Assembly (NCBI GenBank): GCA_021613535.1
Contig: CP075496.1
Location: 10,478,001-10,542,000 of the forward strand
DNA length: 64,000 nt
Direction of reading: 5' to 3'
From: Adineta vaga
Lineage: Eukaryota; Animalia; Rotifera
The notes under the pieces are model-generated. The model searched no databases, was not told where the DNA came from, and was given only the letters and a program-made list of their open reading frames with translations. Position 1 is the first letter of the stretch. Every line of letters starts with the position of its first letter. Below are positions 41,703 through 47,515 of this stretch, piece by piece. A program made the position numbers and the translations under genes.

Positions 41703-42340
<638 letters not shown>

Positions 42341-42847: not shown

Positions 42848-45800
42848 ATGGCATCTGATCAAATAGATGCAAATGCTGATGATAGAAAAAAATCAGCACC
42901 AATGGAATTTAACAATTGGAATGAATTGATTCAACATGTAAATATTAATCATATATCCTATAGAGTATCTTTCAAGTGTGCTTTATGTCATTTTCAGACC
43001 CAGAGTTTATCGCAAGGTTCTGATAAGAAACTGAAAATCTGTATGATTGATGAAGAAAATGAAGAAATTCGTTTACAGAATCAAGATGAATTTGATTTAA
43101 ATGCTCAAGTAAATATCTCTCTTTAGATGATGACAATATTATGATCAATTCTTTTGTTTTAGTACGCTCGAGATCATGATATTAAATCTCTCACTTTCGT
43201 TGTCTATCTCGATGAGAAACATCTATTTAATGGAATATATCATGTTGAAAAACCAATAGAAAAAGTCACTTTTCCTGCAGATAAATTACTAATGCTGTTG
43301 GACAATGTTCTCGTTGAAAAATGGTATATACCAGTTAAACAAGATGAACCACTTGGTGTTTGTTTATTGGCTGCAATTAGTTTAGCTCAAGATGGTATTG
43401 AGAAAGAAAAACTATTTTATTTTATAGAAACAATGTTTTTCTTCGATTTTTTCTCAGGTAAACTTGAAAACGATGTCGATTGTAAACGATTTATTGAAGA
43501 TATTATTCCTGAAGCATTTCGAAAAGTAATATTGATAAAAAAAAAGCTTTTTTCTCTCTATACTAATTCCATGTTTCAGTTACAAAATACTGAATCTGTC
43601 ACGTCATGGCCACGTGAAATACAATGTGGTATATTTGAAATGATTGAATTATTGATTGATTTAGTTGGTATTCGTATTTGCTATCCTCCAGTGCCTATTG
43701 CATTATTAAATACACTTGCTATGGTTTGTTTATTGTCGTTTTAAAATCTTATTTTCTAAAACGAAAATAACTATCATTTAGACATTTGATACGAATACAA
43801 AATTTTCACAAAAACATAAAAACGAATTGATACCATCACGACGTGTATATACTATGAAAGATGATGATTTCCTAAGTGAAGAATACGATCATGAAACATA
43901 TGGTTGGCTACGATCAATTATTCAACGTGTAAGTTTTTAATTAGAAAATAATTTTGTTTTATATATCTATCGATGTTTAGTTCCTTGCACAAAATGGTTT
44001 AGATCGTATTCGTTTACAATTCGAATGTATTAAAGCATCAAATTCTACAACTTCAGCAATGGTTTGTCATTTTCTTGATTGATTTTCTCAACAAAAAATG
44101 TGATGATTTGATTTTTAGGAATATAATGCTCTATTGAAACTATTTTTAAAATGTAATAAATGTATCAATGCACAACGTTATCGTTGTATCTTTCATCGAC
44201 CAATCCATCTCGTGATTCAATATCTTCGAAAACAAAAATCTGCTATTGAAGAAAATCATGAAGTAATTATTGAACTTCTTTTTATTTATTTAGCACAAGA
44301 TTATCTACTTTTTTTTCTAGTTAAAACAATTGTATGAAACATTAATGGATATTTGTTATAAGTATGACTTCAACGATGAAATGAAGAGTTTATTGGCTAT
44401 GTCAAATGCATCAAAACAAGCAGATATATTAACAAAATCTGCTGAATGTGGTTCGGAAACAACACCACTTATTGAGGTAAATAGATAAGCACAGTTTCGA
44501 TTCTTAATGCACAAGAACGATGCCAAATCATAATTTTATAAGACTAAAAAATATGTTTTATATTCATTATTGATTATGAGAACGTTTCTAGATACCAACA
44601 TCTGTACAAAGAAAAACTAAAAATTATGATTGTTACGAGAAACTTGCTGAAGATATTCGCACAATGTCAATGACTAATGAAGATATAGAACGAAAAGTAA
44701 GTTCATTCTTATATCATTGTTTCTCTATAATCGATTGTGATGTATTTTCTTTAAGAATATTAAAAAACAACGAACCGACGAACAAGTACCAATCACATTA
44801 TTTACTCGTAATAATCTTATGGAATGTATCGATGTAAGACAATGAATAAAACGAAAAACAAATTGCTTATCTTTTTCTTTCCAGGAATTATTGACTTCAA
44901 CAGATAAACGTTCACTTAAACGAAAACATCGTCGTGAACATCAACGTTCAACCTTAATGTCAACCAGTTCTGGTCATATGAATAAAAAAGAAAATAAACG
45001 ATCAAATACTATTACACTGCCATCAATACAAAATTTCGATCGGTAAAGAGACAAATCTATGAATATTTCTTTTTTTGTTCTAACATTTTTGTTTAATATT
45101 AGAACAAATCCGGAAGATATTCTTCATTATTTTACTCCAATGAAATTAAAAATTGCGACACTTTATGATAATCTTCATACGGCTACATGCCTTGGTAATA
45201 TTCGTGACGTTTTAAAAATCGAAGAAAAACTTAAATTACTTCGGTAAGAAATAGTTTCACTATCAATCGATCAACATCATATCATTCTATCATTTGTTTT
45301 TAGTCCATTCTCTGCTCGTTTTATTGCGGATGAAAATACACCGGATGGAACAAGTATGCATCAAGGACAAGTTTTTCGTAAAGGTTGGATTCTTCTTAAT
45401 GATGGTTCATTGCCATGGGATAGTACAGATGTTCAATTGATTAATCTATCGGATGGTATTCAAGTTCTTCAACAACCTATTGTACCAACTACAGCACCAC
45501 ATGCTCGAGCTGTTATTACTGTCGATTATAAATGTGCAGATAAACCAGGAACATACGAAAGTAAATGGATACTTTCTTATCGTCAACAAACATTTGGTCC
45601 AATGATATGGTGTTCGATCGAAGTTAATGATCTACCGGTTGGAGAAAAATCTCAAATTCGTAAGAAATTCGACTGATCAATTTTGTAATGTTTCTAAATG
45701 TGATATTTTTTTCAGAAACACTTGTTGATGAAAGTGAATTTGAATTTATTGAAGTACCATTACCAGCCTGTTTTGATTTATCAAAACCATATCAATCTAT

Positions 45801-46775
45801 AATGCAATCGTCATCAAGTGCCAGTTCACTTCATGTAAATATCTTTCGTAGTTTTTGATACATTATAATTGTTTCGTTTGTGTCTTTAGTCAAGTTATAT
45901 TTTACCAAATGTTGATTCAACGGATTTATTATCGAACGATTTCAATGCTGTACATAGTAAGAAAAACTCTTCATTGGCTATTTTGTTTTAATATGATTTT
46001 CTTTTGTTTCAGTTGATAATTTGCAAGATCCATACGGTAGCGATACTGATGATTTTTCAACTCTTTCATCTTCATCTCCCACACCACCATCAGCTATTGA
46101 ACCAATTCTTCCAATAAATTTAGCATCTGAAGAACCAGTCTCATTGATTGAATTAGCTCCGCCAGTAGAAGAGCAAGCCACAACAGTTATAGATGCGAAT
46201 AAATGTGAAGAACGTCAAACAATTCGATTAAAGTACATATACATATACATAGACATATGTTAATATTTAATTATATATCATATTTTTATTTTAGTCAATC
46301 ATTAGATTTTGTTGATACAGTCGTAACAAATATTTTCAGCGTCGCAAAACAAGCAGGTTCAACAGCAAAGGCTATTTTTAATACATTACAAGCTTTTGAT
46401 GAGGTATGAAAACATATATGAAATATGTATATTGATCTATCAATATCCGATATTCTCTCTTTTTGTTTCGTTTTGTAGTCAAGTACTCCCGCAACACCTA
46501 CTACTCAAGAAGAACAACCTAAATTAGTCAATACATTTGCTGCGAGTCCAACAAATACGAATGGATTCTTTGAGCATATTGAACAAATTTCAATAACACG
46601 TACAGATTCATTTCCTTCAGAAGATCAAATGCAAGCATTAATTGAAATGGGATTTGTTAATCGAGCTAAAAATCAACGATTATTAAGAGAAAATGCTAAT
46701 GATTTAGCTAAGGTGATTGAATTCTTAACACTCGATTGCAATGATGATACAGATTGGTTTGCTCATCGTCACTAG
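42848..46775 (+). CDS. NBR1-like autophagy receptor: PB1 - USP24/USP9-like N-terminal domain - FW - LIR - UBA
   Basis: PB1 OPCA-like IDEENEEIRLQNQDEF; KWYIPVKQDEPLGVCLLAA...CKRFIEDIIPEAFRKL; FW domain FIADENTPDGT...KGWILLNDGSLPW...FGPMIWCSIEV; LIR-like SEFEFIEVPLPACFD; UBA LIEMGF.NRAKNQRLL; ends DWFAHRH. Confidence 0.85.
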
Positions 46776-47219: not shown

Positions 47220-47515
47220 ATGTAAGTTTAATTTGAAAGAACATCTTATGAAAATCTTGTCAACTATACAGGTTACGTCATAAGTCAATTCTTGAAACAT
47301 ATGGTTTGGGTTCATCATCAACTGAAGATCAACGTCCAAGTTATGATGAACGTTATCCACCAGTTCGACAACGTAATGACCGAGAACGACCACGTTCAAT
47401 TCGTTTAAAGCCACAAGAATATCTTTTACTTATCTGTGCTGCTCTTGGTATTTCAGCTCTAATTATATACAACGTTTTTAAGTCATACACTGAATACTTT
47501 TCATCCGATGATTAA
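47220..47515 (+). CDS. Small (81 aa) single-pass membrane protein; start codon split by an intron
   Basis: AT (47220-47221) | gtaagt...tacag | G (47272) rebuilds ATG in frame with ORF 47306-47515; C-terminal hydrophobic LLLICAALGISALIIY. Confidence 0.55.

What the first reader, a model, noticed from the sequence alone, without database searches (positions are those of the whole stretch)
42848..46775. NBR1-like receptor carrying a USP24/USP9-type N-terminal domain in place of the ZZ finger
Seen: one continuous spliceable frame with PB1-like, FW, LIR-like and UBA modules in NBR1 order, and no ZZ zinc finger. The segment at ~43265-44060 (VTFPADKLLMLLDNVLVEKWYIPVKQDEPLGVCLLAAISLAQDG...CKRFIEDIIPEAFRKL...WPREIQCGIFEMIELLIDLV...YGWL) closely resembles, from recall, the non-catalytic N-terminal region of USP24/USP9. 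The PB1 end and this segment share one exon (43163-43393), so the junction is not a gene-model merge. No USP catalytic domain is present. Established: canonical NBR1 is PB1-ZZ-CC-FW-LIR-UBA. Inference: domain shuffling produced a receptor that may route a deubiquitinase's partners or substrates to autophagy.
Basis: partly seen in the sequence, partly recalled or inferred. Interest (0 to 1): 0.8.

Follow-up and report, generated by a model that had tools for sequence, protein, structure and literature searches.

The report
Rotifer NBR1 carries USP24 helical module
In bdelloid rotifers the autophagy cargo receptor NBR1 has lost its zinc finger and carries in that slot a ~265-residue helical module copied from the deubiquitinase USP24; the fusion is real and conserved, but what the module binds is unknown.

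Summary
Confirmed. The locus is Adineta vaga I4U23_020518: 19 exons, 940 aa, identical to my exon model, and spanned by one spliced RNA contig in each of two studies. Its PB1, FW and UBA domains all have human NBR1 as best solved-structure match; there is no ZZ finger and no USP catalytic domain. Residues ~100-365 are the non-catalytic N-terminal ARM-like region of USP24 (33% to toad USP24, pairwise E 2e-40; human USP9X E 6e-11), closer to the rotifer's own USP24 than to USP9. Two intron positions are shared with USP24 but not USP9, so it was copied as genomic DNA. The same fusion is in the second A. vaga copy and in Rotaria, A. steineri and Didymodactylos; no canonical NBR1 was found in this genome, and no non-bdelloid fusion was seen (monogononts untested). 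I found no paper describing it. Most likely it works as an ordinary NBR1 with a new protein-binding module in the ZZ slot; that it captures USP24's partners is untested (~25%). A first-stage note of this scan (s1-498676) made the same call on another piece of this genome. New variant of a known kind; interest 0.55.

The parts
42848..46775 (+). NBR1-like gene, 19 exons, 940 aa (A. vaga I4U23_020518, UJR33059.1). Introns: 42938-42997, 43109-43162, 43395-43457, 43526-43579, 43724-43781, 43929-43980, 44062-44118, 44263-44320, 44477-44591, 44697-44755, 44834-44884, 45043-45102, 45244-45303, 45660-45715, 45835-45889, 45957-46012, 46233-46294, 46404-46478
42896..43243 (+). PB1 domain (aa ~17-94) with the acidic OPCA motif DEENEE (aa 48-53, 43049-43066), NBR1 type
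   Evidence: Pfam PB1 E 0.088 on exon 2, E 5e-4 in a Rotaria ortholog; ortholog profile hits human NBR1 PB1 2g4s/2bkf/1wj6 first; beta/alpha pattern in model
43259..44401 (+). USP24-derived N-terminal ARM-like helical module (aa ~100-365), exons 3-9, in the place of the ZZ finger
   Evidence: 33% to toad USP24 94-321, pairwise E 2e-40; human USP9X 81-306 E 6e-11; own-genome USP24 46-47% vs USP9 26-32%; all-helical model pLDDT 90.5; ARM/HEAT solenoid neighbours, best Z 12.4
44762..44938 (+). Two conserved basic motifs in a disordered linker (KKQR at aa 429-432; LKRK at aa 463-466), NLS-like by pattern only
   Evidence: invariant in 10 orthologs; pLDDT < 50
45110..45238 (+). Conserved helical pair just before FW (aa 508-550), position of NBR1 CC1
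   Evidence: predicted helices 508-534, 538-550 at pLDDT 48-63; conserved
45335..45625 (+). FW (NBR1 Ig-like) domain, aa 563-659
   Evidence: Pfam E 1e-16; human NBR1 4ole E 9e-16 against ILRUN 0.11; Foldseek 4ole E 1.4e-8
45727..45789 (+). LIR-like motif, overlapping cores FEFI (679-682) and FIEV (681-684) after acidic residues, followed by an invariant P-L-P-x-C-F-D
   Evidence: human NBR1 LIR1 is SEDYIIILP (PMC5538626); binding not tested
46299..46400 (+). Highly conserved predicted helix (aa 808-841) with hydrophobic 3-4 spacing, candidate amphipathic helix (AH)
   Evidence: equivalence to the mammalian AH is inference
46617..46739 (+). C-terminal UBA domain, NBR1 type, with MGF motif
   Evidence: Pfam UBA_NBR1_C E 7.6e-6; ortholog profile hits human NBR1 UBA 2mgw E 2e-7, next family E 0.01

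Best explanation
This is the bdelloid NBR1. SHOWN: one expressed gene encodes PB1 - USP24-derived ARM module - basic linker - helical pair - FW - LIR-like motif - conserved helix - UBA; the module came from the rotifer lineage's USP24 by a DNA-level partial duplication before the sampled bdelloid genera split and before the two A. vaga copies diverged, and it has been kept as a folded, conserved domain. INFERRED from established NBR1 biology: the acidic PB1 docks on the basic PB1 of p62, UBA binds ubiquitinated cargo, LIR binds ATG8, FW binds further partners. INFERRED, weakest step: the ARM module is a protein-binding surface that took over the ZZ slot and gives ubiquitin-independent recognition of a cargo or regulator. 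Confidence in the architecture and origin is about 0.95; the figure given is for the whole account including the binding role.
For: Gene model and transcripts. NBR1-type PB1, FW, UBA. Only four FW genes found in the genome: this pair and an ILRUN-type pair with UBA-like + FW. USP24 homology. Introns at FRK|LQ and at |EYN shared with own USP24 and absent in own USP9. Same architecture in the C1 copy and in Rotaria, A. steineri, Didymodactylos. About 55 invariant positions in aa 100-365 over 10 orthologs; of six transcript differences checked in exons 2, 3 and 8, five are synonymous and the one replacement lies at aa 99, just before the module (read by hand). A p62-like gene with the basic VK and IRRF residues exists in the genome. 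Fungal Nbr1 ZZ domains bind cargo directly (PMC9582228); USP9X 1-600 is cited as binding a substrate, ALDH1A3 (PMC12006517).
Against: No binding data of any kind. The same review says mammalian NBR1's ZZ, unlike p62's, is not used for N-arginylated cargo, so the slot need not be a cargo site in animals. USP9X evidence concerns 600 residues of a paralog. PB1 and UBA fall below Pfam's curated cut-offs. No tree was obtained, so donor and timing rest on identities, introns and distribution.
Confidence: 0.6

Rival explanations
1. The module still binds what USP24's N-terminus binds, so NBR1 intercepts USP24 clients (or competes for them) and sends them to autophagy instead of rescue.
For: The residues most conserved between USP24s and the module are the same set (F104, P105, W121, I123, P124, K126, E129, W177, G184, P206). 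Human USP24 acts on autophagy through ULK1 (PMC6984603).
Against: Many shared residues are probably structural. Only 41% identity to own USP24 over the best exon. No ligand mapped to this USP24 region was found.
Confidence: 0.25
2. The module is an oligomerisation or docking surface: it self-associates or binds USP24 itself, bringing the deubiquitinase to p62/NBR1 bodies.
For: The two USP9X entries in the PDB hold four chains, compatible with a dimer. Metazoan NBR1 has a monomeric PB1 and relies on another domain to self-associate (PMC9582228).
Against: The interface in the USP9X structures was not examined; Foldseek and VIA did not return USP9X for this model, perhaps because that part is not modelled. 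A CC1-like helical pair is still present.
Confidence: 0.12
3. The module is a tolerated insertion acting as a rigid spacer; it is conserved only to stay folded.
For: Conserved positions are largely hydrophobic; USP24 fragments have been inserted into several other bdelloid genes, so such insertions arise often.
Against: 265 residues kept at 41-71% identity in all ten orthologs and both homoeologs, without truncation; invariant polar residues (K108, K120, K126, D128, E129, Q225, H227, K228, R264).
Confidence: 0.13
4. Artefact: two adjacent genes or a mis-assembly merged by a gene model.
For: Several public bdelloid models of this locus are merged with neighbours (RPS11, CSRNP, a small membrane-protein gene).
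Against: Junction inside one exon; single spliced contigs in two studies; same exon order in the second copy and in four genera.
Confidence: 0.01

Closest known systems
Metazoan NBR1 (human Q14596 type; PB1-ZZ-CC1-FW-LIR-AH-UBA)
   Same: Domain order, acidic OPCA-type PB1, FW closer to NBR1 than ILRUN, LIR-like motif, UBA of NBR1 type, similar length (940 aa).
   Different: No ZZ finger; a 265-aa USP24-derived ARM module and a long basic linker lie between PB1 and the CC1 position.
USP24 (and paralog USP9X/FAF), N-terminal non-catalytic region
   Same: Residues ~95-365, between the UBA and Pfam PF25010, align over the whole module; three intron positions shared with rotifer USP24.
   Different: No N-terminal UBA, no PF25010 ARM, UBL, UCH or DUF3517 domains; not a deubiquitinase.
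Yeast Atg19/Atg34
   Same: NBR1 homologs that lost ZZ and kept PB1, CC, FW, LIR (PMC9582228): ZZ loss has precedent.
   Different: They gained no foreign folded domain and lack UBA.
ILRUN/C6orf106
   Same: FW domain.
   Different: Short UBA-like + FW protein; a separate gene pair in this genome (C3:8.28 Mb, C6:8.13 Mb).
p62/SQSTM1
   Same: PB1, LIR, UBA.
   Different: Has ZZ, lacks FW; present separately in this genome (for example C5:6.352 Mb).

Membership tests
NBR1 | FW domain (the feature used to tell NBR1 from p62, PMC9582228) | tested here: met
   Pfam E 1e-16; PDB 4ole E 9e-16; Foldseek E 1.4e-8
NBR1 | N-terminal PB1 with acidic OPCA surface | tested here: met
   below Pfam cut-off, but ortholog profile finds human NBR1 PB1 first, DEE motif aligned
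NBR1 | C-terminal UBA | tested here: met
NBR1 (canonical architecture) | ZZ zinc finger after PB1 | tested here: not met
   no ZZ match at either copy or in nine full-length orthologs; one CxxC only, inside the USP24 module. So: NBR1 ortholog, not canonical NBR1; Atg19 also lacks ZZ
NBR1 | CC1 coiled coil before FW | tested here: inconclusive
   conserved helical pair 508-550 at low confidence
NBR1 | LIR motif by sequence | tested here: met
   acidic-F-x-x-I/V cores conserved in all orthologs, compared
NBR1 | Binds ATG8, ubiquitin and p62; is degraded by autophagy | not testable with these tools
   needs pull-downs and flux assays
NBR1 | Orthology by phylogeny | not tested
   tree run failed when the script machine was lost; best hits and absence of another NBR1 in the genome point to orthology
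USP24/USP9 deubiquitinases | UCH catalytic domain | tested here: not met
   none in P0128 or near the locus
USP24/USP9 deubiquitinases | N-terminal helical region homology | tested here: met
ILRUN | UBA-like domain then FW, about 300 aa, no PB1 | tested here: not met
   940 aa, PB1 first, FW scores E 0.11 to ILRUN

The most novel reading that the evidence does not exclude
Bdelloids wired a deubiquitinase's substrate-recognition module into their only NBR1, creating a receptor that takes USP24 clients (or USP24 itself) into p62 bodies without needing ubiquitin on them, as one of several bdelloid genes built from USP24 fragments; the module would then be the undefined substrate-binding domain of USP24/USP9X.
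Probability: 0.25. Interest if true: 0.8.

Novelty: new variant of a known kind. Interest (0 to 1): 0.55.

Why it matters
NBR1's architecture is old and stable, and known departures are losses or ZZ duplications; a gained folded domain from a deubiquitinase, fixed across an animal class, was not found in the literature searched. The fusion also marks natural boundaries of an unnamed ~265-aa unit of USP24/USP9X (no Pfam model covers it) that is predicted to fold alone, which gives a ready construct for asking what the large non-catalytic N-termini of these disease-linked enzymes bind. Any link to bdelloid desiccation or radiation tolerance is speculation.

Tried and rejected
Pfam finds nothing on the module: PF25010 starts after it (residue ~369 in USP24). 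PDB search with the intron-containing 193-aa frame found nothing; the full public protein did. The word search with that frame gave only unnamed fragments, which is why the large search was used once. Foldseek, VIA and Atlas give only generic ARM/HEAT solenoids; the Atlas feature search was uninformative. My first guess of introns 9 and 10 was off by one to two bases and was corrected. P0036 looked like a non-bdelloid ortholog but lies next to RPS11 as in bdelloids and reads through short introns. USP9 as donor rejected (identity, introns). Retrocopy rejected (shared introns). UBA taken from USP24 considered (40% to own USP24 UBA) and thought unlikely: best Pfam and PDB matches are NBR1's UBA and it sits at NBR1's position. 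Intron 8 is four codons off the nearest USP24 intron and was not counted as shared. Tree building failed. Literature searches for NBR1 + rotifer, and for ligands mapped to the USP24 N-terminus, found nothing relevant.

Full report
Setting. The genome has 100.8 Mb in six contigs and the window is C4:10,478,001-10,542,000. The gene's public record names it Adineta vaga, a bdelloid rotifer.

1. The observation. Scoring GT-AG pairs and fixing two boundaries gave 19 exons, 2823 nt, 940 codons, no internal stop. All 19 exon peptides lie in order in P0128, hypothetical protein I4U23_020518. Spliced contigs confirm it: a 3008-nt contig of run X1 carries 42998, 43163, 45303, 46013 and 46477 at positions exactly 38 below my CDS positions, and a 3097-nt contig of run X11, from another study, covers the same span. 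These are assembled contigs, not long reads, and the runs' RNA status is the tool's guess, but they lack the introns. RPS11 upstream and the small gene downstream are on separate contigs. Exon 43163-43393, which holds the end of PB1 and the start of the foreign segment, is one piece.

2. The NBR1 parts. FW matches human NBR1 (4ole, E 9e-16) far better than ILRUN (E 0.11). Ortholog profiles of the PB1 and of the C-terminus both find human NBR1 first. The LIR-like motif at 679-684 is conserved with an invariant P-L-P-x-C-F-D tail; human LIR1 is SEDYIIILP, and from memory it is also followed by a CFD. The model of the whole protein (mean pLDDT 57) shows PB1, a helical domain 106-366, a disordered linker, a helical pair, FW, a long disordered stretch with one conserved helix (808-841), and UBA. 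No ZZ is found here, in the second copy, or in nine orthologs. The FW search finds four genes in the genome: this one, its copy on C1, and an ILRUN-type pair. So no canonical NBR1 was found, with the caveat that counts from this search are lower bounds.

3. The foreign segment. In the genome it matches four genes with a UCH domain about 6 kb downstream: a USP24 pair (C4:11.987 Mb, C1:2.480 Mb; UBA upstream; 46-47% identity) and a USP9 pair (C3:7.185 Mb, C6:9.242 Mb; 26-32%). In the large search the long hits are named USP24 of crinoid, sea spider, amphioxus, toad, fish, flatworm and ticks. P0128 100-328 aligns with toad USP24 94-321 at 33% and with human USP9X 81-306 (E 6e-11); by profile the match runs to about residue 365. 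It scores higher against bdelloid USP24-type sequence (41%, 96 bits over one exon; 168 bits to an A. steineri USP24 fragment) than against toad (34%, 76 bits), which fits a donor within the lineage, not a transfer. Folded alone it is 14 helices at pLDDT 90.5, an ARM/HEAT-type solenoid with no specific solved match. No Pfam model covers it.

4. How it arose. The intron at G145 (phase 1) is common to this gene, USP24 and USP9. The introns at FRK|LQ and before EYN (both phase 0) are shared with USP24 only. USP24 has one intron this gene lacks, and this gene has two that USP24 lacks. This points to a partial duplication of USP24 genomic DNA followed by intron gain and loss (inference). USP24 and NBR1 lie 1.5 and 1.2 Mb apart on C4 and C1. 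The C1 copy has the same exons in order at 41-94% identity per exon. Rotaria (four species labels), A. steineri and Didymodactylos have the same architecture, and RPS11 lies directly upstream in A. vaga, Rotaria, Didymodactylos and an unnamed sample. So the fusion is older than these genera and than the two copies. No non-bdelloid fusion appeared among the 17 hits scanned for domains, but the remaining hits are mostly short fragments and no monogonont NBR1 was retrieved, so the outer limit is open. A tree was planned but the script machine was lost.

5. How it probably works. Established NBR1 biology (PMC9582228) gives the frame: acidic PB1 to p62, CC1 self-association, FW to TAX1BP1 or cargo, LIR to ATG8, AH and UBA to ubiquitinated cargo and membranes. 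A p62-like PB1-ZZ-UBA gene with the basic PB1 residues is present. The new module is most simply a protein-binding surface in the slot where fungal Nbr1 binds cargo through ZZ. ARM solenoids are typically such surfaces (own knowledge), USP9X 1-600 is cited as binding a substrate, and human USP24 regulates ULK1 and autophagy. None of this shows a ligand for this module. I put 0.6 on the whole account, of which 0.25 is the case where the ligand is shared with USP24; docking or oligomerisation 0.12; spacer 0.13; artefact 0.01.

6. Membership and novelty. It meets the FW criterion and has NBR1-type PB1 and UBA, so it is an NBR1 ortholog, but not of canonical architecture; it is not a USP. ZZ loss alone is known (Atg19). 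Gain of a USP24 domain was not found in the papers searched; public records call these proteins unnamed, UBA or FW domain proteins. A first-stage note of this scan (s1-498676) reads another piece of this genome the same way, probably the C1 copy; it is not independent support.

7. Conduct. Exons were searched one by one by reference. The large protein search was used once, after the family scans and the word search left the segment unnamed.

Noticed in passing
L024:1427-6360 minus (G000:C1:~15.401-15.406 Mb); P0035: A second USP24 fusion: a longer USP24 N-terminal stretch with PF25010, then two Macro domains and a PARP catalytic domain, no UCH. An A. steineri protein (CAF1311317.1) has the same layout. 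Transcript not checked.
   Followed up: partly
L052:4167-5871 plus (C1:15.017 Mb) and L053:5240-6849 minus (C3:17.818 Mb): Two more USP24/USP9 ARM fragments (PF25010 175-408) directly downstream of a B-box-like/coiled-coil exon; possibly further shuffled genes.
   Followed up: partly
P0095 / P0141 (Didymodactylos): Divergent USP24 N-terminal fragments of 306 and 594 aa with no catalytic domain in the models.
   Followed up: no
window 44762-44938: Two basic motifs invariant across bdelloids in a disordered linker. Human NBR1 shuttles to the nucleus through an NLS in CC1 (bioRxiv 10.64898/2026.03.10.710728); these could be import signals.
   Followed up: partly
window 44152-44163 and 44354-44356 (aa C303, C306, C351): A CxxC and a further Cys are invariant in all ten NBR1 orthologs; the first Cys of the CxxC is not kept in most USP24s. 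Metal or redox site not tested.
   Followed up: no
window 43217-43243 (aa 86-94): The PB1 model lacks a confident first strand but has an extra conserved strand after the last one (invariant F89, G91, Y93), which might complete the fold. Unverified.
   Followed up: no
window 41768-42340 and 47252-47515: RPS11 upstream and a small one-helix membrane-protein gene downstream are often wrongly merged with this gene in public bdelloid models; transcripts here are separate.
   Followed up: yes
L052:2191-3531 plus: A long 446-aa reading frame resembling an amidinotransferase (by eye), next to a USP24 fragment gene; possible foreign gene.
   Followed up: no
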